Shown: piece by piece, positions 25,470 to 42,918 of the stretch
Position numbering within the stretch: position 1 is the stretch's first letter
How the letters are laid out: each line of letters opens with the position of its first letter
IMG/VR virus record: IMGVR_UViG_3300032285_004054
Span: 62,001-126,000 of that record
DNA: 64,000 bases
Direction: 5' to 3' (one strand)
Program-made: the position numbers and the translations under genes
The notes under the pieces: model-generated
What the model was told of the DNA's origin: nothing
Seen by the model: the letters and a program-made list of their open reading frames with translations, nothing else
Database searches by the model: none

Positions 25470-25479
25470 TTAAAATTAT

Positions 25480-25590: not shown

Positions 25591-25607
25591 AATCTTAAAC
25601 TTAAAGA

Positions 25608-25736
25608 TTAGAATAAAAGACCAGCAATAAAGCCGAGCACGAAAATAAGAATAACTAATGCGGCTTTAGGATGGGTTTCAATCCACGAAAACGTAGTATT
25701 GAAAGCAGATGAAATTATTTGTTTTAATTTATCCAT
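25608..25736 (-). CDS. 42 aa C-terminal-TM peptide
   Basis: MDKLKQIISSAFNTTFSWIETHPKAALVILIFVLGFIAGLLF; TAAATA at 25742-25747. Confidence 0.65.
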   Translation of the reverse strand: MDKLKQIISSAFNTTFSWIETHPKAALVILIFVLGFIAGLLF

Positions 25737-25769
25737 ATTATTATTTATGGATAAATTAAACAGAAACCA

Positions 25770-26351: not shown

Positions 26352-26359
26352 TTTTTTAT

Positions 26360-26920
26360 TTATAAAATAGGTTTGGATATATCAAGTATGGTATTATAGA
26401 TAATATCTCTGGCTCGTTCAACGGTCATTTCACCAAAAAGTGTAGATCTTGGATGTATTCGTACTTCTGGAAACTCTGGTGGCTCGTAAGGAGAATCGAT
26501 ACCTGTAAAGTCTTTTATCTCCCCTGCACGTGCTTTTTTATACAAACCTTTAGGATCTCTTAACTCGCAAGTACGTAAAGGTGTATCCATATACACTTCA
26601 ATAAATCTAGCGCTAGCGTATTTCTCTAGCATATCTCGAGCTTCATCTCGCATTGATCGGAGAGGGGAAATCATAGCTACAATAACAAGATTAGCCTTTT
26701 GAAAAGTAAGCATATTTTTAGCACAATAAATAGCTTCAGATACCATTCTCTGTCTACTCTTCATATCAAAGCCTTTTGGTATATCATAACTAGCTCTCAA
26801 AGCATCACCATCAATAAGACCTGTCCGGAATTGAAATATACACTTGTTATACAAAGCATTTGCAACGGTTGTTTTGCCAGCTCCAGATAAACCTGTAATC
26901 CAAACAACAGTAGGTTTCAT
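26360..26920 (-). CDS. cysC: Adenylyl-sulfate (APS) kinase
   Basis: WITGLSGAGKTT, DGDALR, ISP and RDPKGLYKKARAGEIKDFTGIDSPYEPP; start probably ATG 26920 (ATGA overlap). Confidence 0.93.
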   Translation of the reverse strand: MKPTVVWITGLSGAGKTTVANALYNKCIFQFRTGLIDGDALRASYDIPKGFDMKSRQRMVSEAIYCAKNMLTFQKANLVIVAMISPLRSMRDEARDMLEKYASARFIEVYMDTPLRTCELRDPKGLYKKARAGEIKDFTGIDSPYEPPEFPEVRIHPRSTLFGEMTVERARDIIYNTILDISKPIL

Positions 26921-27147
26921 CGATTTAAGTCGAGATGGTAAGACTCTAACAAGTTCCAAAGTTCTTGTCTCGCTGCTTCCATAGCATTAGTATACTCTTC
27001 ATGAGCATCCTCTGCTGGATACTTGACTTTGTTTCTAAGATATTGATCTAGTTCCCAAAGAACAGAATAGAACTTTCCGCCATTGTTGGCAAAGTCAAAG
27101 TCGTCTTGTTCTTCTGGTAGGTCGTAGGTTATGGTTGCTTTTGGCAT
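26917..27147 (-). CDS. Hypothetical phage protein
   Basis: 76 aa, MPKATITYDLPEEQ...WELDQYLR. Confidence 0.7.
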   Translation of the reverse strand: MPKATITYDLPEEQDDFDFANNGGKFYSVLWELDQYLRNKVKYPAEDAHEEYTNAMEAARQELWNLLESYHLDLNR

Positions 27148-27150
27148 ATA

Positions 27151-27627
27151 TTACAAATTATCCCATTCTCTACGAGATTCAAGGTTATTCTTTTTACAAA
27201 TATTACAAGGGCACTTCCATTCTTCTTCCTCCCTAGTCCATCCTCCCCAATGAATAGGGTATGAAGAATGATAAGGTTTAGGTTCTTTTTCTACGGTGTT
27301 ATTAACAATATGATTCTTTAACTTTGCAATTTCTTCTATTAGCCTGACATTCTCTTCTTTAAGATGTCTCAAATTAATAACTTCTTTTAAGAGTTCATTG
27401 TTTTTGTCTACTACTTCTTGATAAAGATTCATCCAATTTTTATTGCCCTTTTTATATTCAAGAATTTCATCTTTTAGTTCTCGATTCTCTTTATAGAACT
27501 TCTCAGACTCTCCTTTAAAGTACTCTGCTGTCTCGATAGGTACATATTGCCAACCAAATGGATTAGTACCTAGAGCATCATCAATAATTTCTTGTTCGTT
27601 TTTATTAGATCCGAATAGATTGAACAT
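27151..27627 (-). CDS. Hypothetical coiled-coil protein (early)
   Basis: Heptad region, C-terminal CPCNIC. Confidence 0.7.
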   Translation of the reverse strand: MFNLFGSNKNEQEIIDDALGTNPFGWQYVPIETAEYFKGESEKFYKENRELKDEILEYKKGNKNWMNLYQEVVDKNNELLKEVINLRHLKEENVRLIEEIAKLKNHIVNNTVEKEPKPYHSSYPIHWGGWTREEEEWKCPCNICKKNNLESRREWDNL

Positions 27628-27634
27628 AAGCTTG

Positions 27635-27662
27635 ATTATAGAGCAAAAGAAAGGTAAGTCAA
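27635..27662 (-). promoter_or_regulatory. Sigma70-like early promoter of the cysC-containing operon
   Basis: TTGACT-N16-TATAAT, 7 nt before ATG 27627. Confidence 0.7.
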
Positions 27663-27675
27663 ATAAATAGTATAG

Positions 27676-28347
27676 ATGTCCAATATTCTAGTCATTTCAG
27701 ACATTCATCTCGGAAGCCCTATTTCTAAAGTTAAATCGTTAGTTAAAGTTCTTAAGAATGAGAAGTATAATCATTTAATTCTTAACGGAGATATATTCGA
27801 TAACAAGCATATTCATAGATATAAGAAAAGACACTGGAATATTCTGAGTTTGTTAAGAAAGATATCAAAGAAGAAAAGGGTAACTTTTATTCTCGGTAAT
27901 CACGATATAAAGTCAAAGAACATTATCAAGATTCTAGGCCTGGAGTTTGTTGAAAGATTAGAACTAGAAGTAAATGGAAAGAAGATGCTGTTTATTCATT
28001 TTCATCAGTTCGATCCTTTTATCTTTAAACACCCTTGGATAACAGATATAGCAGAACAGATTTATTATTTTTTCCAGAGCATAGATAGATCAAAGAGATT
28101 CAGTAGATGGTTAAAGAGAACATCTAAAAGGTTCTTAAAAATCAAAACCAATATAAGAGACAAGGCTCTAAACTATATCAAAGACAAAAACTATGATGCC
28201 ATTTTTGGAGGACATATCCATTTTGCCGAAAGCTTTGTATGCCTAGAATCAGGAAAAGAGTATCACAACTCAGGCTCTTTTTGTGATGAACCTTGTCACT
28301 ATCTAATAATTGACAAGGAAGGTAAGGTTACTTTGAAAGAGATTTAA
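27676..28347 (+). CDS. Calcineurin-like metallophosphoesterase, LpxH-like
   Basis: SDIHLG, GDIFD, GNHD, HFHQFD and GHIH; TAAATA at 27664-27669. Confidence 0.85.
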   Translation: MSNILVISDIHLGSPISKVKSLVKVLKNEKYNHLILNGDIFDNKHIHRYKKRHWNILSLLRKISKKKRVTFILGNHDIKSKNIIKILGLEFVERLELEVNGKKMLFIHFHQFDPFIFKHPWITDIAEQIYYFFQSIDRSKRFSRWLKRTSKRFLKIKTNIRDKALNYIKDKNYDAIFGGHIHFAESFVCLESGKEYHNSGSFCDEPCHYLIIDKEGKVTLKEI

Positions 28348-28700
28348 GCAGTTGTATCGTCGTTGTTGAACCTACCTGCAGCCTGCACACCTTTACCAAA
28401 TGTTTTAAGTTCTCTTGCTCCTGAAATTGCAGCTTTAGCAACAGGTTTTACTTTACGTAATTTTAATAAATTAATTAATGAAGCAAAAGGTATTATTGCA
28501 ATAGCACTAATACCGGCATTTATAATATGCTTCTTTCTTTCATCAGAAGTATCTGCAGCAGCAGCTCGAAATGTAGAAATAACTGTGTTAGCGATATCAG
28601 CAGGAGCTCCTACTTCTGGAACCGCACCGACAAGATCTAAAGCTGCTTGTACTTTATTAACTGAATCTTCGTTGCTCTTATAAAAATCCTTAAAAGACAT
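28344..28700 (-). CDS. Small protein: capsid-targeting-like leader plus pre-toxin-like helical module
   Basis: MSFKDFYKSNE then LDLVGAVPEVGAPADIAN...AGISAIAIIP; TAAGTA at 28711-28716. Confidence 0.55.
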   Translation of the reverse strand: MSFKDFYKSNEDSVNKVQAALDLVGAVPEVGAPADIANTVISTFRAAAADTSDERKKHIINAGISAIAIIPFASLINLLKLRKVKPVAKAAISGARELKTFGKGVQAAGRFNNDDTTA

Positions 28701-28717
28701 AGTGTGTTATTACTTAA

Positions 28718-28915
28718 TCAAATTTCATAGAACCAATTCTTCTTAAACTCTTCAAACTTTTTTTTCCATAGAGTATACTTCTTAAATCTCTTTCCAGCTT
28801 TTCTGCCTTTCTTTTTTACTTTCTTAACCCCTTTAAAGATCATCCAAAAGAACCCAAGCATTCCTAGAGCAAAGAGAGCCATAGTGACATGACCTATGAG
28901 TTGAAAAGGTGTCAT
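28718..28915 (-). CDS. Small TM protein with lysine-rich tail
   Basis: One TM helix followed by a poly-basic segment; TAAATA at 28921-28926. Confidence 0.6.
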   Translation of the reverse strand: MTPFQLIGHVTMALFALGMLGFFWMIFKGVKKVKKKGRKAGKRFKKYTLWKKKFEEFKKNWFYEI

Positions 28916-28919
28916 AGTA

Positions 28920-29777
28920 TTATTTAATATTCAATATATCGGAAATAAACTTTTTAGCTGTTTGAGAAGTTGTATTGTTGTTTAAGAAATGATTCTCAAA
29001 ACGTTCAATATATTTTTCATATACTGTTTCGTATTTCTCGTTTAGAATATCTTTATTTACATTAATACATAGTTCTTTAGGAAAAGAAGTCATTGTGTTA
29101 GTAGGACATAGTTCGATATTTTTAAACAACGGTATACAACCATTACCTAAAATTTCGTAATGCCTCATACAATCCCAGCCTGCTTTTTTACATGTAACTC
29201 CGAACCGAGCATCATTATAGTCTTTATAATAATCTGTTTCATTATTATAAATGTATGTTGTTTTGTCTAGCGGTGTTATGTATGATGTATCTTTTATTTT
29301 CTTCTTATTAAAGTTTACTTTACTAGTTGGTAATCCAAACGAAATCGGTAGTAGTCGTTCTTTTGTGTATATTAATTCTCTCTTAAAATAGCAAATTCCT
29401 AAATCATATACAGGGTGTATATTAACTTCATCTTCACCGTCTACACAAATAATTTTATCTTTTGAATAATACTCTAGAATATTTTCTATATAGTCGTTAC
29501 ATCTCCAAATAGAGCCGTATACTATTAAATCGAAGTATTTGTTTTTAATTTTATTTGTTATATCCGTTCTATCTACTTCTAAATCCTCTAGTACTCTTGT
29601 TACGGTCATACCTTTACCGTACATTTGTTTAGCAACGTTCTCGCTGTAGCTTAGATAGCTGTGTTGTTGCTTTTGTATATCTACAACATTAGCCCCGTAC
29701 AACTCTTTTAACCCTATTAAAAGACAATCGTTTTGATAATCAAGATGATCACCTTTTGTGAAGTACAATATTTTCAT
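28920..29777 (-). CDS. Glycosyltransferase-like protein (GT-B, exostosin-like C-terminal motif)
   Basis: YFKRE and KAGWDCMRHYEILGNGCIP. Confidence 0.55.
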   Translation of the reverse strand: MKILYFTKGDHLDYQNDCLLIGLKELYGANVVDIQKQQHSYLSYSENVAKQMYGKGMTVTRVLEDLEVDRTDITNKIKNKYFDLIVYGSIWRCNDYIENILEYYSKDKIICVDGEDEVNIHPVYDLGICYFKRELIYTKERLLPISFGLPTSKVNFNKKKIKDTSYITPLDKTTYIYNNETDYYKDYNDARFGVTCKKAGWDCMRHYEILGNGCIPLFKNIELCPTNTMTSFPKELCINVNKDILNEKYETVYEKYIERFENHFLNNNTTSQTAKKFISDILNIK

Positions 29778-29778
29778 A

Positions 29779-29949
29779 TTAATATAATTCTTTGTACTCT
29801 ATATAGCTCTCTAAAATCTTGTCTTCAAACTTAAATTGAAGACACTCTTTACCGTCTTGTGTATATCTTTGAATAAAGATAACTTGTGTCAAGGGTACCC
29901 ATTGTTTGATATCCTCTACCCATACTGATGCTATTCTTACACCATACAT
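29779..29949 (-). CDS. Hypothetical 56 aa protein
   Basis: MYGVRIASVWVEDIKQWVPL...KELY; TAATG-coupled to the upstream ORF; below the track cutoff. Confidence 0.55.
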   Translation of the reverse strand: MYGVRIASVWVEDIKQWVPLTQVIFIQRYTQDGKECLQFKFEDKILESYIEYKELY

Positions 29950-30140
29950 TATTTGTTGCAGTGATAATTTATAAAGCGTTGAGCGGCTTTTGCAACATTA
30001 CTACCTTTATTCTTTTGCCCTGCTTTAATAGAACGAGCTTTTGAACAAGTAACCTTACCAGATACTCTACGCTTGAGTATACCTGGTCTTACTGGGTCAT
30101 TAATATTCTTTTCCAGTAGGTATTGTTTGAACGTTTGCAT
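29949..30140 (-). CDS. Small basic protein with capsid-targeting-like leader
   Basis: MQTFKQYLLE then a K/R-rich body. Confidence 0.7.
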   Translation of the reverse strand: MQTFKQYLLEKNINDPVRPGILKRRVSGKVTCSKARSIKAGQKNKGSNVAKAAQRFINYHCNK

Positions 30141-31401
30141 TTGGATGTTTAATAGCTATTTTCGGTCCACCGAGTGATATAGTTGCGATAGTAATATATT
30201 TTTCTAAATCATTATGAGGTACGTAAATATAACCTGCTGGCGATACAACGAATAGACCTGTAAGATGAGAAGGAAATAAACTCTTAATGCTTTCAGGACT
30301 CTTAATCATTTCCTGAATATCATTTACTTTATCAAGTATGTTTAGTTTTGAAACGGATTTAAAAAATTCTCTCCAACTAGATTCTCCTTCACCTGTAATA
30401 TGTACTTTAGCTTTTGAAAGTTTTTTGTCAACTATTTTAGCTGTCTTTTCAATTTCTTGATCTAAAGCTGAAGCTTTTTCGGAATTTGGTGCACTGTAAT
30501 AGCTCTTAAAGGTCTTTTTAAGAGCAGCGACTCTAGGATTATCTTCTTGAGATTTATGATCACTAGGTTCTTCACCTGCTTCTACTTGTTCATTTTCTTC
30601 TATATTGTTAATAATTGTACCGAACGTTTTAACAGACATTAAAACTCTAATACCGCCTCTAGTAAGTGCAGGTTCTTTATCAGAGTAAATAAGTGAAAAA
30701 GGAAACTCTTTTGTGTCAGATAAAATACCTTTAACCCATTTTTCAATAGACCAGCTTGTTCTTCTAAGCATTAGTTTATCGTACTGTGCACGTCCTTTAA
30801 CTGCTCTTTTACCGGGTTCTTTAACTTCTGGTAAATGAGAAACAATATAGTTGTTGATATAGGTCTTATCTTCCTCGCTTAATAGATCATATTCATCTAA
30901 AATATCGTTTAAAACATGCTTAACTTCACTAAAAAATTTCTTTGTAAAATTGGCGCCATGTTTCGCAATACGTACAGACCCTTCTTCAATCATTTTAACC
31001 TCGAAAGTATATTCAGGATGTTCTTTTGTAGGCCAAGAAACATCATAAGATTTGTTCTGTCCTGAAATAAGCTTCAAACACTGATTAGGATCTGTTATAC
31101 CTGTAATAACAGATGCAACAGCTAATTCACCCGGACCTGCGCCTGACTTTTCCTCTTCGAGTTCTGGGTAATCACTTGTTGTTTCTATCTGTTTACTAGC
31201 TGTAAGATTGTACAGATTTTGCTGTACTGGTGTCCAGGGTACAACATTTAGTATTGGTTTTGTTACATCTATACGAATACCTTCTTGAGCCTCTTCGTGT
31301 ATAGAGGTATATGCTTCATTGAGGGTACGATATTGAGATTTGTAATTGGTGTCACCAATAACTTTTTCGTATGTCTGTGTTAAAAAATGATTTTGTGACA
31401 T
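30100..31401 (-). CDS. PD-(D/E)XK restriction-endonuclease-like protein
   Basis: GAGPGELAV...SYDV-x10-FEVK; start probably ATG 31401 after TAAATA at 31412-31417. Confidence 0.5.
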   Translation of the reverse strand: MSQNHFLTQTYEKVIGDTNYKSQYRTLNEAYTSIHEEAQEGIRIDVTKPILNVVPWTPVQQNLYNLTASKQIETTSDYPELEEEKSGAGPGELAVASVITGITDPNQCLKLISGQNKSYDVSWPTKEHPEYTFEVKMIEEGSVRIAKHGANFTKKFFSEVKHVLNDILDEYDLLSEEDKTYINNYIVSHLPEVKEPGKRAVKGRAQYDKLMLRRTSWSIEKWVKGILSDTKEFPFSLIYSDKEPALTRGGIRVLMSVKTFGTIINNIEENEQVEAGEEPSDHKSQEDNPRVAALKKTFKSYYSAPNSEKASALDQEIEKTAKIVDKKLSKAKVHITGEGESSWREFFKSVSKLNILDKVNDIQEMIKSPESIKSLFPSHLTGLFVVSPAGYIYVPHNDLEKYITIATISLGGPKIAIKHPNANVQTIPTGKEY

Positions 31402-31490
31402 TTGTGTATAGTATTTAAGGTCGAATATAAAGGAAAATGCTGTGATGTGCAAGTCCAAAAGTTACTCTAACTTTGAATAAATATTAATAG

Positions 31491-32285
31491 ATGAGCAAAA
31501 AAAGCTCTCGTCGAAAGACGAATAAGCAAGACGGGTCTACCCAGATGGTAACAGTATCTGGTGGTGATCACTCCCCTTACGTGTTCCAACGCGATAAGAT
31601 AAACTTCGACCTCATTATAAGAGAACTACCCTGGACGGAAAAACAGAGAGAGATAATAAACCTGTTTTTAGACAAATCCTGTAAAGTATTGTTTTTAAAA
31701 GGTGTGGCTGGTTCTTCCAAGACATTGTTATCAATGTATCTCGGATTACAGCTTTTAAATACTAGAAAGGTATCAGATATTGTTTTAGTTCGTTCAGCTG
31801 TTGAATCTGCTGATTCAAAACTTGGTTTCTTACCAGGAGATCTTGTAGATAAGTTTAACGTCTATTTGACACCTTTTAACGAAAAGTTCTCTGAGCTTTT
31901 ACCAAAACCTATTATCGATAAACTTGAAAAAGATAATAGATTAACAATGTGCCCGGTTAATTTTGCTAGAGGGTTGCACTTCTCAGCTAAGTTCGTTTGC
32001 TGTGATGAAGCTCAAAACTTAACACGTAAAGAACTATTAACTGTGTTAACACGTTTAGGTTTATTTACAAAAACAATTATTTGTGGGGATCCTGATCAGT
32101 CTGACTTACCTACAGGTAGATCAGGCTTTAAAGAAGTGTATAACTTATTTGATTGCGAAGAAGCAAAAGAAATGGGAATACATTGTATTGAATTAACAGA
32201 ACTAGATGTAGTTAGATCTGAACTATGTAAGTTTGTTGTTAAGAAGTTTAAAGAGCTTCCTCAGGTAGTAATTAAACACCACTAG
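31491..32285 (+). CDS. phoH: PhoH-family ATPase
   Basis: GVAGSSKT, RSAVE, LGFLPG, ARG, DEAQN, GDPDQSD and DVVRS. Confidence 0.92.
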   Translation: MSKKSSRRKTNKQDGSTQMVTVSGGDHSPYVFQRDKINFDLIIRELPWTEKQREIINLFLDKSCKVLFLKGVAGSSKTLLSMYLGLQLLNTRKVSDIVLVRSAVESADSKLGFLPGDLVDKFNVYLTPFNEKFSELLPKPIIDKLEKDNRLTMCPVNFARGLHFSAKFVCCDEAQNLTRKELLTVLTRLGLFTKTIICGDPDQSDLPTGRSGFKEVYNLFDCEEAKEMGIHCIELTELDVVRSELCKFVVKKFKELPQVVIKHH

Positions 32286-32318
32286 CATCTGTTATTTTTT
32301 AACATAAGTAGTAGTACT

Positions 32319-34816: not shown

Positions 34817-34825
34817 TTTATATTA

Positions 34826-37021
34826 TTAGTTTTGTTTCATTATTTCGTTTGCTTGATTAAGAATATCTTGTATACCTTTAACAGCATCAAACGCTTTTTG
34901 TGTTATATTACCAACTTTAACAAAGTGATCGCCCATAGTTACCATATTGTGATCTCCTTGTGTGTAATGTTCTCTATTACCTAAGGCAGCATCAAAAGAA
35001 TGTCCATCAGATTGTTTATAAAAATCATCTGGTGAATATAATACGGTGTGATCATTTTGAAATGCTAAGTGGGCACCATTATGATTAGCAATTTTAATGC
35101 CTCGTTGATCACCAATAGAATCTCCTGACGAATCATTGAATAAAATAGCTCCTGAACCGTTCGGTCTAAAGACAGAAGACTGCGTATATACTTTATTATC
35201 ACTACTATCGTTTGCGTTAGGGTAGTAAAGTGGTGGCGAGCTACCATGATATGCACTCGCCCATTCAGTAGGCCCGAAGCTTGCTGCAAAATAAACTGGG
35301 AATAACGGATTACCTTCTTGGAAGAATACCCATAAAAACGCTCCTTCATTGGGTACTGCAAACATACCTTGTGCCATACCGTTAGTATCTGTCGGAGAAG
35401 GTCCTTTACCTGTTGTTGTTTGAATTACATTTGAACTCGGTGCTTTACCACCTGTGCCCTTTGAACCGCCTCCGCCGTCACCAACGGTCTTATCAGACAT
35501 TGGCTGTCCGCCATAAGCGGCTTGCGCTTTTCTATACTGACTATTTGTTTTAGACCCTAAACTCTGAACAGCACAAAATAGATTACTCAATTTACCTTCA
35601 TACGCTGCAGGTGTATTAGTAAAGAAGTCAAAATGGAAATAACAACGCTCAGCGTTACCGGTATCAGTAACAGTGTATGTACCTGCAGGATTATTACCTG
35701 AAGGATTAAACGGTGATTTATCGTTATTGAATATACTTAAAACAGTACCTCCGGGGTAGTGAGTTGAGCCTACAGTGTGATCTGCATTTAATGGTCCGTA
35801 ACAACCGTTGTAAGCGTCTGCAAGGTTCAGGGTACCTGTTCTCATACCTCGGGCGTTCATACTAGCTTCCTGTCTTGCAATAAATTCAGGTGAATATTTT
35901 GCTAAAATTTCAGGAGGTCGCTGAGACGGTTTAATATCAAGAAGAGTGGTAAGATCGGTTTCTGGTCCTCCGTAGGTTGTACCGCTACAAGGTTCAAGAG
36001 ATGAATTAGGAAATTGAGGTGTAACACCTTTTGTATCTGGTTTAGCGTCTTGTCCTTCTTGACCTTGTAAAGCAGGTGCACCCTCAGGGTTTTTAAAAGG
36101 CATTGCAGCAGGTCTTAGCCCTTGGGCACTACCATCTGGAGCAGCAGTTGTAGCATTAGCTGTTGTAGGGGCTTGATCTGTTGCAGTTGAGTTATTCGTA
36201 ACAGCTGTAGGATCAATTTGAGCACCAGGTTCAGCTCGTTGATACATTTCCTGTGAAGGTAGGTATACCTGAATGTTTGAAGCATTACCGTTATACGCAT
36301 TACCTGGCCCTGCTTCACTCCAAACCCATTTACCGGTACCATCTGATAATTCCATATGGCCGTTTTCACCGCCATTAGAAACCTTTACAGCACCAGGAGG
36401 ATATGTTGCATTAGGATCATATGCTACAGGCTGAAAACCTGCTTTGACTAAATTTGGACCAAAATCTTTAGCAGATGCTGTTGGTGCAATATTAACACCG
36501 AATGTCTTATTAAGAGCGTTTGTACTAATAGCTGCACAATACGTACTAGCACCTGTTGTACCTGTTTTAGGGTTATAATGCTTTGGGTAGTTGGTTGCAG
36601 CTATAATTTTTTGACCTAACGAAGAAGCTGACGAAGAATCTAGTAATGATTTACCTGCTGCAAGAGCACCAGAAGCAAGATTTGTTGCACCTGCTACTGC
36701 TCTACCTAGTACATCTTTTGCACTTTGTAGCCAATTACCTGTACTGGAATCTCTGTGCCCTGCAGTACATGAACCAATAATCGGTGAAGCTGCTTCGCAC
36801 CAGGGAAGAATTTTCTGTAATGTTTTTAAAACATTGTCATCTAATGCTCCGTTTAAATTTGCACCTAATGATTTTATATTAATATCAGTACCTGCTTGAT
36901 TCCATTTTTCATATAGAGCAGGCATGATATGAGGAATGAATACCTTAACACGACCTCTAAATTCAGGGTCTTTGTTATAAACACAAACTCCCAAATAATT
37001 ACCGTAATATTCTTTCATCAT
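34826..37021 (-). CDS. gp5: Baseplate hub gp5-like OB-fold protein with inserted CHAP-like and 3D domains
   Basis: YLGVCVYNKDPEFRGRVKVFIP...LPWCE and GMFAVPNEGAFLWVFFQEGNPLFPVY OB halves flank the catalytic domains. Confidence 0.75.
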   Translation of the reverse strand: MMKEYYGNYLGVCVYNKDPEFRGRVKVFIPHIMPALYEKWNQAGTDINIKSLGANLNGALDDNVLKTLQKILPWCEAASPIIGSCTAGHRDSSTGNWLQSAKDVLGRAVAGATNLASGALAAGKSLLDSSSASSLGQKIIAATNYPKHYNPKTGTTGASTYCAAISTNALNKTFGVNIAPTASAKDFGPNLVKAGFQPVAYDPNATYPPGAVKVSNGGENGHMELSDGTGKWVWSEAGPGNAYNGNASNIQVYLPSQEMYQRAEPGAQIDPTAVTNNSTATDQAPTTANATTAAPDGSAQGLRPAAMPFKNPEGAPALQGQEGQDAKPDTKGVTPQFPNSSLEPCSGTTYGGPETDLTTLLDIKPSQRPPEILAKYSPEFIARQEASMNARGMRTGTLNLADAYNGCYGPLNADHTVGSTHYPGGTVLSIFNNDKSPFNPSGNNPAGTYTVTDTGNAERCYFHFDFFTNTPAAYEGKLSNLFCAVQSLGSKTNSQYRKAQAAYGGQPMSDKTVGDGGGGSKGTGGKAPSSNVIQTTTGKGPSPTDTNGMAQGMFAVPNEGAFLWVFFQEGNPLFPVYFAASFGPTEWASAYHGSSPPLYYPNANDSSDNKVYTQSSVFRPNGSGAILFNDSSGDSIGDQRGIKIANHNGAHLAFQNDHTVLYSPDDFYKQSDGHSFDAALGNREHYTQGDHNMVTMGDHFVKVGNITQKAFDAVKGIQDILNQANEIMKQN

Positions 37022-37046
37022 GTTAGTTACTTAATTTTGTTATCAA

Positions 37047-39419
37047 TTATTCTCCAAGGAATTGTTTACGTGCATTCATTTTTTGTTGGTACTGAGCAGC
37101 GGTTGCTTTATCGAATGTTGCAGGTTCTTGGCTAGCGCTACCTGCTGGTTGAGGGGCTTGTGCGCTACTATTACCTAAGAACTGATCAGCTGCTGCATTT
37201 GACGATGCAGTACTATTACCTAAGAACTCATCTGTAGCAGGATTTGTTGGTGTTGGTGTACTATTACTGTTACCTAAGAATTGTTCTGCTGCCGCACTAG
37301 AAGGTGTACTACTATTTCCTAAGAACTGATCTGCTCCTGCACTTGACGGTGCACTACTGTTACCGAGGAACTGATCTGCTCCTGCACTCGAAGGAGCGCT
37401 CTCATTACCTAAAAATTGATCTGCGGATTGTGTACTCGGTGTAGGGGTAGTATCAGCATTATCATCATTGTAAATGCCTGAACTTGTTGCACTTGCTCCT
37501 GTACCTAACGATTCTTCAGTGTCAGCATATGTTATAGGTGATTCTTCACCCGCTAAATCATTAGCAGCAGATGTGGGTTCGGGTTGAGCTACATCCATAC
37601 TACCGGGAGAAGCAAGATCTGTCATATTGAATGCAGCATCAGACATATTATTATAAATTCTTTCTTGATTGTTGAATGTTTCTTGACCGTTATCAGCCAT
37701 AGCTAACTCAACAGGTGATAATGTTGCAGCTTCAATCGGGCTTGTTACATTGCTGTAATCTAGATTGAAAGGTTTGTCTGCTGCAGCAGTTGCAGCTGCG
37801 GAAGCATCTCCGTATGTTTTTTGAGCATCAGCTGCATTACTCGGAGCATTTGCTGTAGATGTAGCAGGATCAAGTGAGTAAGGTGCTTTAGGTGCACCGA
37901 GACAGGGATCCTTAACAACCTGTCCACTTCTATCTGTGTTATAATTAGGACGACCAGGGGCAGATACGTTATTGTATTTGTAGCTAAAAGCCGGTGGAAC
38001 AGGAGGAGCAGTAGGTTTAAAAATAGAATTTAAAATTTGAAATTGACTACTAAAAGCGCCTATTATGCCTGCAAGTACACCACCTTTAATTTGGTCTAAA
38101 GCAGTAGTGAGACCATACCCCATATTGTAGTTATAACCGTATCCGGATATCTTATTAAGAATACATAGTATCGTACTAAACGGCGGTGGTAATGCGCTTA
38201 CCAAAGCTTCAGGATTATTTAAAAACGCCATTCCTTGTTGAACTTGCGGTGGTAGGAAACGAGCAGCTAATGCAGCAGGGTTGGAAATAATAGACCCTAG
38301 CTGTCCTGTAACATTTGTTAATTGGCTTGTAAATTGTGTTATTTGGTTTAAACCTCCAAATGCGCTTGCTATAGAACCTACACTACCTGCGATCTGGGTA
38401 ACAGCTTGTAAAAAGCCTAATACCATATTAAGAGGTATCAATTCATTTATAATCATGAATACAAATTTTTGTAACATGTAAAATAAATCATTAATAAATT
38501 TACCGATGCTTTTGATAATATTCATAGCACCTAGATACATGTCCTTAATAAACTGTACAGGTCCGAATAACTTACCTCCTGCCATAGCGCTTTGTAAGTG
38601 TTGAATACTACCGTATATATTACCTGGTAGATGGGATATCTCCTCCATCTTAATAGCTAGAAAAGAAGCTTCATGGGATTGAGCAAATTTTGGATTTACC
38701 TTGTTAATAACCCCGCCTATTGTAGGTATAATACCATGGGCACCTAAAGGATCTCTTAGCATACCAGTTAAACCGTATAAAGTTGAACCGATAAACTTAT
38801 TAACAGGTTTAAACTTGTCATGCATTATCTGTACTGCTTGACCAAGTGATGATGCAATACCTGCTTCAGCACCAGCTAACCCGTTAGCAATACTACCTAC
38901 TGCACAATTTATAGAATTATTAGCGGTATTAACAAATAGATTAGCGTATTGATTACGTACAATAGCGTGTACATCCTGGGTTAAAGCACCAGGTGCGGCT
39001 TGAATACCAGCACCGTTTAACATTGCATTTGATTGCATCAACGCAGCTTCCATACCGGAATTTGTTGCTTGTGCTTGATTTAGCATGTTAAATGCATTAT
39101 CAAAAAGACCTAAATGAGGTATAACTTTATCCTTTTTAGCAGGGTCTAGTATACCGGTTAACCAAGTATCAGGCCCGTTTAAGTAAGTAGTACCTTTACC
39201 GCTAGCAGATGATGGTGTACTACTTTCTCCTAAGAACTGATCTGCTCCAGCACTCGAAGGAGCGCTACTATTGCCAAGAAATTGGTTCGCTCCTGTACTT
39301 GATGGTGCGCTGCTATTGCCAAGAAATTGGTTTGCTCCAGCACTTGAAGCAGCGTTCCGAGCAGCAAGTTGATCAAACTGCGCTCTAGCAGCATCTCCAG
39401 TTAGTTTTTGTACAGACAT
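37047..39419 (-). CDS. Large helical protein with terminal QFLGN repeats (baseplate hub, tape-measure or ejection candidate)
   Basis: Ala/Gly amphipathic-helix core and low-complexity repeated ends; upstream of gp5; TAAATA at 39431-39436. Confidence 0.5.
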   Translation of the reverse strand: MSVQKLTGDAARAQFDQLAARNAASSAGANQFLGNSSAPSSTGANQFLGNSSAPSSAGADQFLGESSTPSSASGKGTTYLNGPDTWLTGILDPAKKDKVIPHLGLFDNAFNMLNQAQATNSGMEAALMQSNAMLNGAGIQAAPGALTQDVHAIVRNQYANLFVNTANNSINCAVGSIANGLAGAEAGIASSLGQAVQIMHDKFKPVNKFIGSTLYGLTGMLRDPLGAHGIIPTIGGVINKVNPKFAQSHEASFLAIKMEEISHLPGNIYGSIQHLQSAMAGGKLFGPVQFIKDMYLGAMNIIKSIGKFINDLFYMLQKFVFMIINELIPLNMVLGFLQAVTQIAGSVGSIASAFGGLNQITQFTSQLTNVTGQLGSIISNPAALAARFLPPQVQQGMAFLNNPEALVSALPPPFSTILCILNKISGYGYNYNMGYGLTTALDQIKGGVLAGIIGAFSSQFQILNSIFKPTAPPVPPAFSYKYNNVSAPGRPNYNTDRSGQVVKDPCLGAPKAPYSLDPATSTANAPSNAADAQKTYGDASAAATAAADKPFNLDYSNVTSPIEAATLSPVELAMADNGQETFNNQERIYNNMSDAAFNMTDLASPGSMDVAQPEPTSAANDLAGEESPITYADTEESLGTGASATSSGIYNDDNADTTPTPSTQSADQFLGNESAPSSAGADQFLGNSSAPSSAGADQFLGNSSTPSSAAAEQFLGNSNSTPTPTNPATDEFLGNSTASSNAAADQFLGNSSAQAPQPAGSASQEPATFDKATAAQYQQKMNARKQFLGE
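37160..37427 (-). repeat. Six ~45 bp coding repeats (ADQFLGNSSAPSSAG)
   Basis: Visible in both DNA and translation. Confidence 0.9.
39204..39338 (-). repeat. Three 45 bp coding repeats (GANQFLGNSSAPSST)
   Basis: Visible in both DNA and translation. Confidence 0.9.
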
Positions 39420-39459
39420 TGGTTAATAAATATTTAACCGTTAATTTTAAAAATTAAAG

Positions 39460-39487
39460 TTGAATATATACTGTTCTAATATAAAAT
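39460..39487 (+). promoter_or_regulatory. Sigma70-like promoter of the glycosyltransferase-sulfotransferase operon
   Basis: TTGAAT-N16-TAAAAT, 6 nt before GTG 39494. Confidence 0.55.
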
Positions 39488-39493
39488 TAATAC

Positions 39494-40426
39494 GTGAACG
39501 AATATGAATATATTATACTACATATTGATGGAGGTATGGGTAAAAACGTTGCTGCAACTGCTGTTGCGCATGCAATTAAAAAACAACATTTTGTAAGTAA
39601 GTTAATTATTGTTACAGCATGGCCTGAAGTATGGATACATAATCCAGACGTACATAGGGTTTATAAGTTTGGTACTTTGCTATATTTTTACGAGGATTAC
39701 ATTAAGGATAAAAAGACTAAAATAATGCGTCTTGAGCCTTATCATTCTGAAGATCTTCTTCTAAAGAGAAAGCATCTTGCAGAGGTTTGGTGTGATCTTT
39801 ATGATATTCCCTGTGATAGCGTACAGCCTAGAATTTATCTAAGTAACAGGGAATTAATGGCTGCAAACGCTCTGGTTAAAAAGCAAGGACCTATACTTGT
39901 TGTTCAGTCCTCAGGTGGTGCAGATGGTCAAGGATACCCCTATTCATGGGCTAGAGACCTACCACCTCAGGTAGCTCAAGAAACCGTAAATCTTGTTAAA
40001 TCACAATTTAGTAAGGTATATCAAATAAGACGAGATAATCAGATTGTAATCGATGGTACGGAACAATTAACAGGTAATCTTCGAGACATTATTAGTGTTA
40101 TTGCATTATCTGATAAGTTTTTAGGTATTGATTCACTTATGCAGCATGCTTGTGCTGCTCTTAATAAGCCTGCTACCGTAGGATGGATTGCTAATTCGCC
40201 AACTGTGTTTGGTTATAAGTTGCATAATAATATAATTGCAAAAGGTAGTACTGAGTTTAAGCATTACGTTGAATCGTATTTAGAAGAGTATGACTGGGTA
40301 GGTAGTCGATTCCATGAATGTCCTTATACTGATGTAAATAGTATTTTTGATATTAAAGAATTAGCTAATTCTTTGCTTGAACCTGGTACAAAGTTAGTAG
40401 ATAATAATGGTCTGCTTTTAAACTAA
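39494..40426 (+). CDS. Glycosyltransferase, GT9 (heptosyltransferase)-like
   Basis: IDGGMGKNVAAT, NPDV and FLGIDSLMQHACAAL GT9 motifs. Confidence 0.75.
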   Translation: MNEYEYIILHIDGGMGKNVAATAVAHAIKKQHFVSKLIIVTAWPEVWIHNPDVHRVYKFGTLLYFYEDYIKDKKTKIMRLEPYHSEDLLLKRKHLAEVWCDLYDIPCDSVQPRIYLSNRELMAANALVKKQGPILVVQSSGGADGQGYPYSWARDLPPQVAQETVNLVKSQFSKVYQIRRDNQIVIDGTEQLTGNLRDIISVIALSDKFLGIDSLMQHACAALNKPATVGWIANSPTVFGYKLHNNIIAKGSTEFKHYVESYLEEYDWVGSRFHECPYTDVNSIFDIKELANSLLEPGTKLVDNNGLLLN

Positions 40427-41250
40427 TGAAAAATATATTCTTTAATTCATCAATGCCTAGAAGTTGTTCTACCCTTCTTCAGTGCATTTTTAATCAGCAT
40501 CCGGAGATTCAAGCTACACAAACCGACCCTGTACTTGAATATCTTTATGGTGCTAGGATGAATTATACGAGTACACCAGAGGTTAAAGCTATGGATAAAG
40601 ATCTAGCTTTGAATACCTGGCGTGGGTTCTGTTGGGGTGGTCTTCAAGGATATGCTGATGCTTATACCGATAAACCTAATCTTTGTATTAAGACGAGAGG
40701 CGCTTCAATTCATTATTCTTGGTTTAATGCTTTTATGCCCTATCAGCCTAAAATGATCTGTATGGTAAGAGACCTTAAAGGTATAATTGCTTCTATGGAA
40801 AAGCTCTATAGAGCAAATCAAGAACATCATCAGGAGATACAAAATCATAGAGATATGAAAGGTACATCTACAGCAAAGAGAGTAGATGCTTGGTTTGCCT
40901 CCCCACCTGTTGGTTTAGCATTAGAACGTTTACAGCAATGCGTACACGAAGGTATTAATAAGAATATACTTTATGTACGAGCAGAAGATCTTTCTTCTAA
41001 TCCTTCCGAGCAAATGGAACGAATTTATAGTTATCTTGATCTACCTAATTTCGAACACGACTTTAAAAACGTCGAGCAGTCTATTAAGGAAGATGACTCT
41101 GTTTATGGTTTAACAGATACTCTTCACACAATACGCAGAGAGGTAAAAGCACTTAAGGATGATTCAAGGGAGATCCTGGGAGAACCAGTTTGTACTTGGA
41201 TTGATAATACCTTTCAATGGTACCAGAAAGGCTTTGGATACCTTAAATAA
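40426..41250 (+). CDS. PAPS-dependent sulfotransferase
   Basis: 5'-PSB SMPRSCSTLL, 3'-PB MVRD...IIAS, VRAEDL..NP; TAATG-coupled to the GT. Confidence 0.85.
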   Translation: MKNIFFNSSMPRSCSTLLQCIFNQHPEIQATQTDPVLEYLYGARMNYTSTPEVKAMDKDLALNTWRGFCWGGLQGYADAYTDKPNLCIKTRGASIHYSWFNAFMPYQPKMICMVRDLKGIIASMEKLYRANQEHHQEIQNHRDMKGTSTAKRVDAWFASPPVGLALERLQQCVHEGINKNILYVRAEDLSSNPSEQMERIYSYLDLPNFEHDFKNVEQSIKEDDSVYGLTDTLHTIRREVKALKDDSREILGEPVCTWIDNTFQWYQKGFGYLK

Positions 41251-42113: not shown

Positions 42114-42128
42114 ATTGTTTATTATTTA

Positions 42129-42917: not shown

Positions 42918-42918
42918 A

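What the first reader, a model, noticed from the sequence alone, without database searches (positions are those of the whole stretch)
26360..41250. Possible phage glycan-sulfation pathway: CysC, sulfotransferase and glycosyltransferases
Seen: APS kinase (26360), a GT9-like gene translationally coupled to a sulfotransferase (39494-41250), a second GT-like gene (28920) and an LpxH-like phosphoesterase (27676). cysC and the GT9/sulfotransferase operon sit behind sigma70-type promoters. Known: CysC makes PAPS, the sulfotransferase donor; GT9 and LpxH families act in LPS biosynthesis. Inference: cysC serves to feed sulfation rather than cysteine synthesis. The product could be a sulfated glycan on host LPS (superinfection exclusion), on Ser/Thr-rich virion fibres, or on DNA.
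Basis: partly seen in the sequence, partly recalled or inferred. Interest (0 to 1): 0.7.

Follow-up and report, generated by a model that had tools for sequence, protein, structure and literature searches.

The report
Phage sulfation cassette fed by cysC
An uncultured 218-kb T4-like freshwater phage carries a conserved, phage-specific gene pair (a heptosyltransferase-like glycosyltransferase and a sulfotransferase) inside its virion-gene block, plus an accessory APS kinase that most likely makes the sulfate donor PAPS for it, so a viral "sulfur assimilation" gene probably serves to decorate a surface molecule instead.

Summary
The core observation holds. cysC (26360-26920, minus strand) is an intact APS kinase. 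40426-41250 is a sulfotransferase (ST) with both PAPS-binding motifs. 39494-40426, which overlaps the ST start in a TAATG junction, has no Pfam hit above cut-off but folds as a GT-B enzyme closest to GT9 heptosyltransferases. The "LpxH-like" label fails: that gene is a generic metallophosphoesterase. The second GT (28920-29777) is GT-B-like but absent from all 20 relatives tested. The genome has no ATP sulfurylase, no PAPS reductase and no second ST. The GT9-like/ST pair is adjacent in 61 of 80 related viral loci, always among virion genes, and is almost absent from 185,579 cellular genomes. cysC travels with a 76-aa ORF and is missing from the two near-complete relatives. In a second phage lineage, about 20 loci fuse the GT9-like gene, the ST, a mini APS kinase and a nucleotidyltransferase into one operon, often beside tail-fibre genes. 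This is good contextual evidence that the kinase feeds the ST. The Cys in the PSB loop is a lineage variant (G, M or C) and does not indicate inactivation. The acceptor is unresolved: virion fibre proteins are favoured, and the host envelope is the main rival. Overall this is a new variant of a known kind; interest 0.6.

The parts
39494..40426 (+). GT9-like GT-B glycosyltransferase (310 aa, GTG start). This is the first gene of the cassette and belongs to a phage-specific family.
   Evidence: AF2 model pLDDT 88.5. Foldseek top hits are all GT9: 3tov 1e-11, WaaF, WaaC, TibC. PF01075 scores only 12.4 bits. More than 350 homologues, many on contigs of about 200 kb. Only one hit in 185,579 cellular genomes.
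40426..41250 (+). PAPS-dependent sulfotransferase (274 aa), translationally coupled to the GT9-like gene through a TAATG overlap.
   Evidence: PF13469 and PF00685 above cut-off. The 5'-PSB loop is P11-R12-S13-C14-S15-T16, and the 3'-PB pair R115...S123 is invariant. Junction sequence. Nearest solved homologues are TPST1/2. Atlas clusters are 94-100% viral.
39460..39487 (+). Promoter-like element ahead of the cassette: TTGAAT-16-TAAAAT (9/12). It overlaps TATAAAAT, a near match to the T4-type late promoter TATAAATA, and ends 6 nt before the GTG start.
   Evidence: Similar TTGAnT...TATAAT-like or TATAAAATA elements occur in relatives. The expression class is unresolved.
26360..26920 (-). cysC, APS kinase (186 aa from the ATG at 26920). 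It makes PAPS from APS.
   Evidence: PF01583 4e-45. TIGR00455 161 bits, above its 138.7 cut-off. P-loop, LIDGD..R, ISP and KGLYKKARAGEIKDFTGID motifs are all present. It belongs to a phage clade with at least 120 clusters at 55-83% identity, many on 200-226 kb contigs.
26917..27147 (-). 76-aa acidic ORF whose stop overlaps the cysC start (ATGA). It is co-inherited with cysC; function unknown.
   Evidence: It lies upstream of cysC in 15 of 15 related loci. It is present in the cysC+ relatives G006 and G013 and absent from the cysC- relatives G003, G009 and G007. No family hit.
27151..27627 (-). 158-aa ORF, first gene of the 158aa-76aa-cysC transcription unit; function unknown.
27635..27662 (-). 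Best sigma70-type promoter match of the region (TTGACT-16-TATAAT, 11/12), in the 48-bp divergent intergenic gap.
26357..26364 (-). T4-type late promoter TATAAATA overlapping the cysC stop. It heads the lysis cassette (u-spanin-like 25770-26351, 117-aa ORF, lysozyme 24508-25119) and so sets the downstream limit of the cysC unit.
28920..29777 (-). Accessory GT-B (exostosin/CgeB-like) glycosyltransferase, 285 aa. It is not part of the conserved module.
   Evidence: AF2 pLDDT 97.4. Weak GT-B hits. Relatives are fused to GT2, FkbM, CmcI and DUF5672 domains. Absent from 20 of 20 relatives.
27676..28347 (+). Generic calcineurin-like metallophosphoesterase. It is not LpxH and probably unrelated; a PAP-clearing role is pure speculation.
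   Evidence: It neighbours cysC in only some relatives.
41352..44396 (-). Four paralogous fibre-like ORFs (253, 262, 233 and 259 aa) directly downstream of the cassette. They are candidate acceptors.
   Evidence: Three of them (262, 233 and 259 aa) are 31-33% identical to each other over their full length; the 253-aa ORF matches only through the N-terminal segment. The 253- and 259-aa ORFs share that segment with the tail-collar protein 13015-13971, and the 253-aa ORF also with 11412-11882. S+T 14-23%, Tyr 5-8%.
37047..39419 (-). 790-aa structural protein, the divergent neighbour of the cassette, with about 9-10 copies of the Ser-rich repeat QFLGNSSAPSS at both ends. A second candidate acceptor.
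   Evidence: It lies next to the gp5-like baseplate spike 34826-37021.
13015..13971 (+). Tail-collar-domain fibre protein that shares its N-terminal anchor motif with two of the four paralogues (the 253- and 259-aa ORFs).
   Evidence: PF07484 8.6e-20.

Best explanation
The window holds a phage-encoded decoration module with two parts.

Core part. This is a two-gene, translationally coupled cassette: a GT9-derived GT-B glycosyltransferase followed by a PAPS-dependent sulfotransferase. It is conserved throughout a large lineage of uncultured freshwater T4-like phages (about 200-225 kb) and always sits among virion genes. Both proteins lack signal peptides and so act in the cytoplasm.

Proposed action. 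The GT attaches a sugar, and the ST adds sulfate, either to that sugar or to a neighbouring hydroxyl. The favoured acceptor is the phage's own surface proteins: the fibre-like paralogues, the tail-collar family and the Ser-rich repeat protein that flank the cassette. The result would be negatively charged, sulfated fibres.

Accessory part. This is a 76-aa ORF plus cysC, probably expressed early from a sigma70-type promoter. CysC phosphorylates host-made APS to PAPS. That tops up the sulfate donor for the ST in hosts where PAPS is scarce. Relatives without cysC would rely on host PAPS.

Shown: the enzyme family assignments, intact motifs, gene coupling, conservation, co-occurrence and synteny. 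Inferred: that CysC's PAPS goes to the ST (probability about 0.7), that a glycan is involved (about 0.55), and that the acceptor is a virion protein (about 0.4-0.45).
For: Enzymes are intact. CysC passes an equivalog-level model and has all its motifs. In the ST, S15, T16, R115 and S123 are invariant. The GT model is confident and closest to GT9.

No competing use for PAPS is encoded by the phage. There is no Sat, no CysD/N-type or CysH-type gene, and only a single ST.

The cassette is conserved. The GT9-like gene and the ST are adjacent in 61 of 80 IMG/VR loci, and 18 of 20 large records carry both.

The APS kinase and the ST are functionally linked elsewhere. About 20 second-lineage loci carry the GT9-like gene, the ST, a mini APS kinase and an NTase as one overlapping operon in two different gene orders, often together with GT4 and an FkbM methyltransferase.

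The context points to the virion. The cassette neighbours gp13, gp20, gp21 or gp22 in relatives. Here it is flanked by fibre-like paralogues tied to a tail-collar protein. In the second lineage it lies directly downstream of a Peptidase_S74 tail fibre in 15 loci. In relative G019 a TibC/Aah-type protein O-heptosyltransferase (TIGR04414, 2e-73) lies next to it. In the cultured Pelagibacter podophage HTVC111P, the GT homologue starts at the stop codon of the tail-fibre gene.

The family is phage-specific. There is one hit in 185,579 cellular genomes, on a 7-kb MAG contig, and the ST clusters are 94-100% viral.

There is a precedent. Iyer et al. 2010 (PMC2938197) predicted bacterial operons that join sulfotransferases, PAPS synthetases and tail-collar or collagen-like substrate proteins.
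Against: There is no biochemical evidence at all, and the phage and its host are uncultured.

In this lineage cysC is unlinked to the ST (13 kb apart here, 18-84 kb in relatives). It is also absent from both relatives that are at least 90% complete. The link between them therefore rests on the second lineage and on the absence of other PAPS-using genes.

The GT9-like protein fails the Pfam and NCBIfam cut-offs. At the position of the GT9 catalytic Asp it appears to carry an invariant Lys17, though that alignment is low-confidence. Its donor, and even its transferase chemistry, are therefore unproven.

The TibC-like neighbour occurs in only 1 of 20 records.

A sigma70-like promoter would suggest expression before virion assembly, which fits host-surface remodelling at least as well.

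Genes inserted among structural genes of T4-like phages are often unrelated to the virion.
Confidence: 0.5

Rival explanations
1. Host-envelope remodelling. The GT9-like enzyme and the ST act at the cytoplasmic face on a host lipid-linked glycan (LPS core, capsule or EPS precursor) during infection. This adds a sulfated sugar that blocks superinfection, or stops progeny phage being lost on cell debris. CysC supplies the PAPS.
For: The nearest structural relatives include the LPS core heptosyltransferases WaaC and WaaF. The sigma70-type promoters would suggest early expression. LPS and Nod-factor sulfation with a dedicated PAPS supply is established in rhizobia (own knowledge: NodPQ/NodH, LpsS). 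In S-SRM01 the ST sits in a glycan-gene cluster away from obvious fibre genes. The phage also encodes an alginate-lyase-like enzyme, so it does deal with acidic polysaccharides.
Against: The GT9-like family is essentially absent from cellular genomes. Enzymes borrowed to act on host LPS usually keep close cellular relatives. The cassette's position in virion modules and beside fibre genes is conserved across three unrelated phage groups. The phage is T4-like with no sign of lysogeny, so the classic seroconversion logic does not apply.
Confidence: 0.25
2. cysC is an ordinary auxiliary metabolic gene that boosts the host's assimilatory sulfate reduction (cysteine and methionine supply for phage protein synthesis). 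It is functionally unrelated to the sulfotransferase.
For: This is the standard reading in the literature (PMC12713726, PMC8066274, bioRxiv 10.1101/2020.02.13.942896). cysC is in a different operon 13 kb away, far from the ST in relatives, and patchy while the ST is core.
Against: The phage carries no other assimilation step: no sat, cysDN or cysH, and the weak cysH-like hit is QueC. An APS kinase homologue is fused into the ST operon in about 20 loci of another lineage. No near-complete genome of this lineage was seen with cysC but without the ST. Extra PAPS without extra reductase gives little assimilatory gain (inference).
Confidence: 0.15
3. The ST is a protein sulfotransferase, acting on tyrosine or another side-chain hydroxyl. 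It sulfates virion or host proteins directly. The GT9-like enzyme glycosylates in parallel, so no sulfated glycan exists.
For: The best solved homologues by profile search are TPST1/2 (E 5.6e-6 to 1e-3), ahead of carbohydrate sulfotransferases such as HS 3-OST (0.017). The flanking fibre-like paralogues are Tyr-rich at 5-8%. Iyer et al. predicted sulfation of tail-collar proteins.
Against: The match to TPST covers mainly the shared PAPS-binding half (residues 6-124). The ST is consistently coupled to glycosyltransferases and sugar-modifying genes (GT9-like, GT4, FkbM, epimerase).
Confidence: 0.2
4. The module modifies phage DNA with a sulfated or glycosylated base, or builds a small sulfated metabolite.
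For: T4-type phages glycosylate DNA with GT-B enzymes. The accessory GT 28920-29777 weakly resembles T4 alpha- and beta-glucosyltransferases.
Against: The genome has no ThyA/dCMP-hydroxymethylase family gene. It carries QueC, which points to 7-deazaguanine chemistry instead. That accessory GT is absent from all relatives. The GT9-like fold matches lipid- and protein-directed enzymes, not DNA glucosyltransferases.
Confidence: 0.05

Closest known systems
NodPQ-NodH (Sinorhizobium meliloti Nod-factor sulfation) and LpsS LPS sulfation
   Same: The logic is the same: a dedicated, extra copy of PAPS-synthesis enzymes is kept to feed a carbohydrate sulfotransferase rather than cysteine synthesis. The family assignments of the APS kinase and the ST were tested here; the Nod system itself is from own knowledge.
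   Different: This phage has only the APS kinase step and no ATP sulfurylase. Kinase and ST are unlinked in this genome. The carrier is a lytic T4-like phage, and the acceptor is unknown.
GT9 heptosyltransferases: WaaC and WaaF (LPS core), and TibC/Aah (protein O-heptosylation of autotransporter repeats)
   Same: The GT-B fold is shared, and these are the best structural matches (E 1e-11 to 1e-7, TM 0.5-0.66). There is a weak HMM signal over the nucleotide-sugar-binding region. A true TibC-type enzyme neighbours the cassette in one relative.
   Different: Identity is only 11-14%, below the family cut-offs. The N-terminal G-D catalytic motif reads G-K, with Lys17 invariant. The family is phage-only. 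The donor sugar is unknown.
Predicted bacterial sulfotransferase / PAPS synthetase / tail-collar or collagen-like protein operons (Iyer, Abhiman, de Souza, Aravind 2010, PMC2938197)
   Same: A sulfotransferase and PAPS synthesis genes are co-encoded with T4 short-tail-fibre-type (tail-collar) proteins, which were proposed as the sulfated substrates.
   Different: Those operons are bacterial and pair the ST with 2OG-Fe(II) hydroxylases. Here the partner is a GT9-like transferase and the genes lie in a phage genome. Both remain predictions only.
Virus-encoded virion glycosylation (mycobacteriophage capsid and tail glycosylation; chlorovirus PBCV-1 capsid glycans)
   Same: Virus-encoded GTs sit next to structural genes and decorate the virus's own virion proteins (own knowledge). 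PBCV-1 A075L appears among the weak structural hits of the accessory GT.
   Different: No sulfation is known in those systems, and the GT families differ.
Annotated but uncharacterised phage sulfotransferases (Synechococcus phages S-SKS1, S-SRM01, S-SCSM1; OM43 phage MVGs)
   Same: They belong to the same Pfam family and are 26-29% identical. In S-SRM01 the ST is also clustered with glycan genes.
   Different: The literature calls their function 'unclear' (PMC10580990). No cysC link or GT9-like partner has been described for them.

Membership tests
Adenylyl-sulfate (APS) kinase, CysC (PF01583 / TIGR00455) | Profile HMM score above the curated cut-off | tested here: met
   PF01583 154 bits (cut-off 21.1). 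TIGR00455 161.1 bits (cut-off 138.7).
Adenylyl-sulfate (APS) kinase, CysC (PF01583 / TIGR00455) | P-loop GxxGxGK[ST]T, LDGD..R substrate motif, ISP(Y/L)R motif and the KGLYKKAR...FTGID lid segment | tested here: met
   All are read directly in the translation and aligned in A3. The second-lineage mini kinases lack the lid segment.
Adenylyl-sulfate (APS) kinase, CysC (PF01583 / TIGR00455) | Catalyses APS + ATP -> PAPS | not testable with these tools
   Needs an enzyme assay or complementation of a cysC mutant.
PAPS-dependent sulfotransferase (PF13469 Sulfotransfer_3 / PF00685) | Profile HMM score above the gathering cut-off | tested here: met
   PF13469 45.9 bits (cut-off 27); PF00685 37.4 bits (cut-off 22).
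PAPS-dependent sulfotransferase (PF13469 Sulfotransfer_3 / PF00685) | 5'-phosphosulfate-binding loop (P-[KR]-x-G-[ST]-T) | tested here: inconclusive
   The loop is present as PRSCST. S15 and T16 are invariant and P11 and R12 nearly so, but the Gly position is C, M or G across 20 family members. This is a lineage-wide variant under conservation and probably tolerated, but its effect on activity is untested.
PAPS-dependent sulfotransferase (PF13469 Sulfotransfer_3 / PF00685) | 3'-phosphate-binding Arg...Ser pair (R-x7-S) | tested here: met
   R115 and S123 are invariant in alignment A4.
Glycosyltransferase family 9 (PF01075, ADP-heptose heptosyltransferases) | Profile HMM score above the gathering cut-off | tested here: not met
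   PF01075 12.4 bits vs 22. TIGR02201 16 bits vs 170. No PDB hit by sequence profile. hhalign vs E. coli WaaC gives probability 0.8%.
Glycosyltransferase family 9 (PF01075, ADP-heptose heptosyltransferases) | GT-B fold closest to solved GT9 structures | tested here: met
   Foldseek ranks 1-26 are all GT9 (3tov, 1psw, 2h1h, 2gt1, 4rb4, 4rap), E 1e-11 to 1e-7, TM 0.51-0.66, on a model with pLDDT 88.5.
Glycosyltransferase family 9 (PF01075, ADP-heptose heptosyltransferases) | Catalytic Asp in the N-terminal Gly-Asp loop after strand 1 (WaaC Asp13; own knowledge) | tested here: inconclusive
   A low-confidence hhalign to a TibC-type enzyme aligns its S-L-G-D with G-M-G-K of the phage protein. Lys17 is invariant, and a D/E at position 12 is conserved nearby.
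Glycosyltransferase family 9 (PF01075, ADP-heptose heptosyltransferases) | Uses ADP-heptose as donor | not testable with these tools
   No heptose-pathway gene was identified in the genome. The only PF01467 hit is weak (13.4 bits) and lies elsewhere.
LpxH (UDP-2,3-diacylglucosamine hydrolase) | Match to LpxH-specific models rather than the generic metallophosphoesterase model | tested here: not met
   Only PF00149 and PF12850 match. The NCBIfam best hits are PdeM, SbcD and YfcE, all sub-threshold, and no LpxH model is listed.
Dedicated PAPS-supply plus sulfotransferase system (NodPQ/NodH type) | ATP sulfurylase, APS kinase and ST encoded together | tested here: not met
   This genome has no ATP sulfurylase, and cysC and the ST lie in different operons. 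In the second lineage, the ST, a mini APS kinase and an HxGH nucleotidyltransferase of unknown specificity share one operon.
T4-like myovirus (host genome of the feature) | gp23 capsid, gp20 portal, gp21 protease, gp13 and gp5-like genes | tested here: met
   PF07068, PF03420 and PF26809. Portal_T4 1e-96. gp23 is about 34% identical to cyanophage gp23.

The most novel reading that the evidence does not exclude
These phages make sulfated glycoprotein fibres, which would be the first sulfated virion component known in any bacteriophage. They would use a phage-only transferase derived from the GT9 fold, together with a viral sulfotransferase, and they carry their own PAPS supply. In the second lineage, the 130-aa HxGH nucleotidyltransferase and the lid-less 140-aa APS kinase would together form a minimal viral PAPS synthase (sulfate -> APS -> PAPS). 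The widely reported viral 'cysC' auxiliary gene would then be, at least in these lineages, a virion-decoration gene rather than a sulfur-assimilation gene.
Probability: 0.3. Interest if true: 0.8.

Novelty: new variant of a known kind. Interest (0 to 1): 0.6.

Why it matters
Viral cysC is routinely counted as an 'assimilatory sulfate reduction' auxiliary metabolic gene in virome surveys, without validation (PMC12713726, PMC8066274). Phage sulfotransferases are annotated, but their function is described as unclear (PMC10580990). The comparative evidence here ties the two together, along with a phage-specific glycosyltransferase, into one decoration module. If this is right, sulfur-cycle inferences drawn from viral cysC counts are partly misattributed. 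Phages would also be shown to put sulfate, a strong permanent negative charge, on a surface molecule. That could affect adsorption, aggregation, interaction with cations, or evasion of host receptors and polysaccharide barriers in lakes. The cassette is small (two to four genes) and can be tested directly in E. coli without culturing the phage.

Tried and rejected
- Megablast of the 15.5-kb region against 50,697 phage records gave no match, so there is no close cultured relative.
- Sequence-profile searches of the GT9-like and accessory GT alignments against the PDB found nothing useful.
- hhalign of the GT9-like alignment against E. coli WaaC (probability 0.8%) and against a phage TibC-type enzyme (probability 11%) was not significant. 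It was used only as a hint about the G-D versus G-K loop.
- Complex prediction of CysC with the 76-aa ORF gave no verdict (score 0.00). It is not evidence either way.
- The reverse co-occurrence test (do cysC-bearing records carry the ST?) was inconclusive. The 11 records are 9-43% fragments; 3 had the ST.
- The look-up of sequencing runs found only the probable source metagenome and no RNA run, so expression timing could not be checked.
- The pmoC-phage idea, prompted by a paper on large freshwater phages that lists cysC, was rejected: the genome has no AmoC/PmoC gene.
- The DNA-modification idea was rejected as unlikely: no ThyA/hydroxymethylase family, QueC present instead.
- The apparent PAPS reductase hit (16.4 bits) is QueC.
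- The LpxH assignment was rejected.
- Host identity could not be inferred. The MAG labels on homologues (Alphaproteobacteria, Sulfurimonas, Beijerinckiaceae) sit on short contigs and are probably mis-binned phage DNA.
- No structure model of the ST was made, because both prediction jobs went to the two GT candidates.

Full report
**1. Where the window lies**

The window is bases 62001-126000 of a 218,400-bp IMG/VR virus record that CheckV rates as 100% complete. It is a T4-like myovirus. It has a gp23 major capsid gene (44935-46404, minus strand), a gp21 protease, gp13, a gp20 portal (52880-54802, Portal_T4 1e-96) and a gp5-like spike. Its gp23 is only about 34% identical to any cultured phage, cyanophages being the closest. 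Megablast of the region finds nothing. Relatives come from freshwater metagenomes; one example is a Lake Mendota MAG contig. Many homologues sit on contigs of 200-226 kb. The phage therefore belongs to a large lineage with no cultured member.

**2. What is in the sequence**

- **cysC.** The gene is real and intact, but it lies on the minus strand at 26360-26920. Its ATG overlaps the stop of a 76-aa ORF. Scores are PF01583 4e-45 and TIGR00455 161 bits against a cut-off of 138.7, and all canonical motifs are present.
- **cysC transcription unit.** cysC is the third gene of a unit 158aa-76aa-cysC. The unit is headed by the best sigma70-type match in the region (TTGACT-16-TATAAT, 11/12). It ends at a T4-type late promoter, TATAAATA, which overlaps the cysC stop and starts a lysis cassette of a u-spanin-like gene, a 117-aa ORF and a lysozyme.
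- **Promoter caveat.** Sigma70-like matches across the whole region are no more frequent than in shuffled sequence (59 vs 55.4). Only their position in intergenic gaps gives them any weight.
- **Sulfotransferase.** 40426-41250 passes both Pfam models. It overlaps the upstream gene by one base, TAATG.
- **GT9-like gene.** 39494-40426 has no family hit above cut-off. A confident AlphaFold model (pLDDT 88.5, pTM 0.89) matches GT9 structures in Foldseek ranks 1-26: a Veillonella GT9, WaaF, WaaC and the protein O-heptosyltransferase TibC, with E 1e-11 to 1e-7 and TM 0.51-0.66. It works like a GT9-fold transferase, but membership of GT9 is not shown. At the position of the catalytic Asp of the G-D loop, the family appears to carry an invariant Lys17 (low-confidence alignment).
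- **Second 'GT'.** 28920-29777 gives a very confident model (pLDDT 97.4) with weak GT-B/exostosin-like matches. Members of its large family are fused to GT2, FkbM, CmcI and DUF5672 domains, so it is a glycan enzyme. None of 20 relatives has it.
- **'LpxH-like' gene.** This is only a generic metallophosphoesterase.

**3. The rest of the sulfur pathway**

The complete genome has no ATP sulfurylase. It has no PAPS reductase: the 16-bit hit is QueC, at 2e-65. It has no second sulfotransferase. The only phage-encoded consumer of PAPS is therefore the ST, and APS must come from the host.

**4.

- **The pair is conserved.** A scan of IMG/VR with the GT9-like alignment found at least 385 related loci, of which 80 were kept. 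In 61 of these 80 the ST is next to the GT9-like gene. Of 20 large records, 18 carry both.
- **The position is conserved but the neighbours are not.** The flanking genes vary (portal, gp13, gp21/gp22), but they are always virion genes.
- **Full-length cysC is patchy.** It is present in 4 of the 20 records and absent from the two that are at least 90% complete (198.8 kb; and 202.9 kb with terminal repeats). Where present it lies 18-84 kb from the ST.
- **cysC has a long history in the lineage.** It forms a deep phage clade of at least 120 clusters at 55-83% identity, many on 200-226 kb contigs. It is not a recent pick-up.
- **cysC travels with the 76-aa ORF.** That ORF is upstream of cysC in 15 of 15 loci. 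It is present in two cysC+ genomes and absent from three cysC- genomes.
- **The decisive context comes from a second lineage.** This lineage is more distant (GT 40-42% identical, ST 41-46%). About 20 of its loci carry the GT9-like gene, the ST, a 138-145-aa APS-kinase homologue (PF01583 1e-8 to 2e-17; P-loop and DGD..R kept, lid segment missing) and a 128-132-aa HxGH nucleotidyltransferase. These form one operon with overlapping stops and starts, in two different gene orders. The operon is often preceded by a GT4 and an FkbM methyltransferase.
- **What this shows.** Keeping the same gene set through rearrangement is the usual signature of a shared pathway. It links APS kinase to this ST and to sugar chemistry.
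- **Further support.** Cyanophage S-SRM01 has its ST in a cluster with a glycosyltransferase and a nucleotide-sugar epimerase.

**5. Is the sulfotransferase dead?**

Across 20 family members that position is C (in this phage and three relatives), M (most of this lineage) or G (second lineage). S15, T16, R115 and S123 (the 3'-phosphate pair) are invariant, as are some 40 other columns, and mean column identity is 69%. That pattern fits a working enzyme with a tolerated loop variant, not a decaying one. Activity is still untested.

**6. The acceptor**

*Evidence for virion proteins.*
- The cassette always lies in virion modules.
- In this phage it sits between a 790-aa structural protein with about 9-10 Ser-rich QFLGNSSAPSS repeats and four fibre-like ORFs at 41352-44396. 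Three of the four are 31-33% identical over their full length. The fourth is tied to them by the N-terminal segment alone. Two of the four share that N-terminal motif with a tail-collar-domain protein at 13015-13971 (PF07484, 8.6e-20).
- In the second lineage the operon follows a Peptidase_S74 tail fibre in 15 loci.
- In one relative it adjoins a true TibC/Aah-type protein O-heptosyltransferase (2e-73), beside a fibre with Gly/Ser-rich repeats.
- In the cultured Pelagibacter podophage HTVC111P, the GT homologue begins at the stop codon of the tail-fibre gene.
- The GT9-like family is almost absent from 185,579 cellular genomes, and the ST clusters are 94-100% viral. This suits a phage-specific substrate.
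- Iyer et al. (PMC2938197) had already predicted bacterial operons in which sulfotransferases and PAPS synthetases modify tail-collar or collagen-like proteins.

*Evidence for the host envelope.*
- The fold is also that of the LPS core heptosyltransferases.
- The upstream elements look sigma70-like, and therefore early. They also overlap a near-late-promoter sequence, TATAAAAT(A), which recurs in relatives, so timing is open.

*Direct protein sulfation* is a further option. By sequence profile, the closest solved homologues of the ST are tyrosine-protein sulfotransferases (5.6e-6), though the match covers mainly the PAPS-binding half.

*DNA* is unlikely as the target.

**7. Verdict**

Several parts need correction.
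- cysC lies on the minus strand, and its operon structure differs from what was described.
- The LpxH assignment fails.
- The second GT is a strain-level accessory gene.
- cysC is a dispensable booster rather than part of the core.
- The core is the GT9-like/ST pair.

I put about 0.7 on the link between CysC and the ST, about 0.55 on a sulfated glycan, and about 0.4-0.45 on virion fibres as the acceptor.

A search of the literature library found viral cysC listed only as an unvalidated assimilation gene, and phage sulfotransferases described as of unclear function. No paper links them. This is a new variant of a known kind: a dedicated PAPS supply plus a sulfotransferase, and virus-encoded surface decoration. 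It can be tested directly by heterologous expression.

Noticed in passing
window 26917-27147 (-): A 76-aa acidic ORF is translationally coupled to cysC (ATGA overlap). It is found upstream of cysC in 15 of 15 related loci. It is present only in cysC+ relatives (G006, G013) and absent from cysC- relatives (G003, G009, G007). No family hit. A complex prediction with CysC gave no verdict.
   Followed up: partly
loci L078 2995-5495, L062 2995-6024, L085 2098-4689 and about 17 more (second phage lineage): One operon holds the GT9-like gene, the ST, a lid-less mini APS kinase (138-145 aa) and an HxGH nucleotidyltransferase (128-132 aa, GRWQPxHxGH motif, NMNAT/cytidylyltransferase-like). It is often preceded by GT4, an FkbM methyltransferase and a 114-aa ORF. 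The nucleotidyltransferase could be a minimal ATP-sulfurylase analogue or a sugar-1-phosphate nucleotidyltransferase.
   Followed up: partly
locus L078 5461-6861 (-) / G019:C1:9621-10610: A TibC/Aah-type autotransporter O-heptosyltransferase domain (TIGR04414, 2e-73, above cut-off) lies inside a 1134-aa open frame. It is next to the sulfation operon and to a tail fibre with Gly/Ser-rich GG..N.ASG repeats and a Peptidase_S74 chaperone domain. It was found in 1 of 20 records only.
   Followed up: partly
window 37047-39419 (-): A 790-aa structural protein carries about 3 N-terminal and 6-7 C-terminal copies of a Ser-rich repeat (A[DN]QFLGNSSAPSSAG). It is the divergent neighbour of the GT9-like gene and sits beside a gp5-like baseplate spike (34826-37021).
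   Followed up: no
window 41352-44396 (-), 11412-11882 (+), 13015-13971 (+): Three small ORFs (233-262 aa) are paralogues at 31-33% identity, and a fourth (253 aa) is tied to them by its N-terminal segment alone. A segment of about 35 aa (CIGDSL..IN.NF..L) links two of the four to a Phage Tail Collar protein, and the 253-aa one also to a 156-aa ORF. This looks like a family of small fibres with a common anchor.
   Followed up: partly
window 50529-51953 (+): An alginate-lyase-like protein (PF05426, 2.8e-10) is encoded on the opposite strand between gp13 and the portal. It is a possible polysaccharide depolymerase.
   Followed up: no
G000:C1 about 30259-31589 (L003 1492-2822), outside the window: QueC (2e-65) is followed by a weak glutamine-amidotransferase-like ORF, which suggests a 7-deazaguanine DNA-modification pathway. 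No ThyA/dCMP-hydroxymethylase family gene occurs anywhere in the genome.
   Followed up: partly
window 121, 11392, 12998, 14422, 18623 (+); 26364, 44411, 48318 (-): Eight of the 13 TATAAATA copies lie 5-13 nt upstream of ORF starts on the correct strand, so the phage uses T4-type late promoters. The sigma70-like -10 boxes also end 6-7 nt before start codons. Leaders are therefore very short or absent, and Shine-Dalgarno sequences are not obvious.
   Followed up: partly
window 24508-26351 (-): A lysis cassette lies directly downstream of cysC. It comprises a u-spanin-like lipoprotein with a C-terminal TM helix (25770-26351), a 117-aa ORF and a phage lysozyme (24508-25119), behind a late promoter that overlaps the cysC stop.
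   Followed up: partly
window 49171-49629 (-): A TnsA-like endonuclease domain ORF (PF08722, 1.9e-17) is inserted between gp13 and the prohead protease. It is probably a homing-type endonuclease.
   Followed up: no
window 51878-52519 (-): A 213-aa protein with 29.6% Ser+Thr and internal repeats (NSAAYLSSVDLSFLSVSGNWN.AY) lies next to the portal gene.
   Followed up: no
locus L104 (Pelagibacter phage HTVC111P) 4983-5864: The cultured podophage's 'putative glycosyl transferase' gp53 is a 26%-identical homologue of the GT9-like protein. It starts at the stop codon of the tail-fibre gene gp52. This phage is a tractable system for testing fibre glycosylation.
   Followed up: partly
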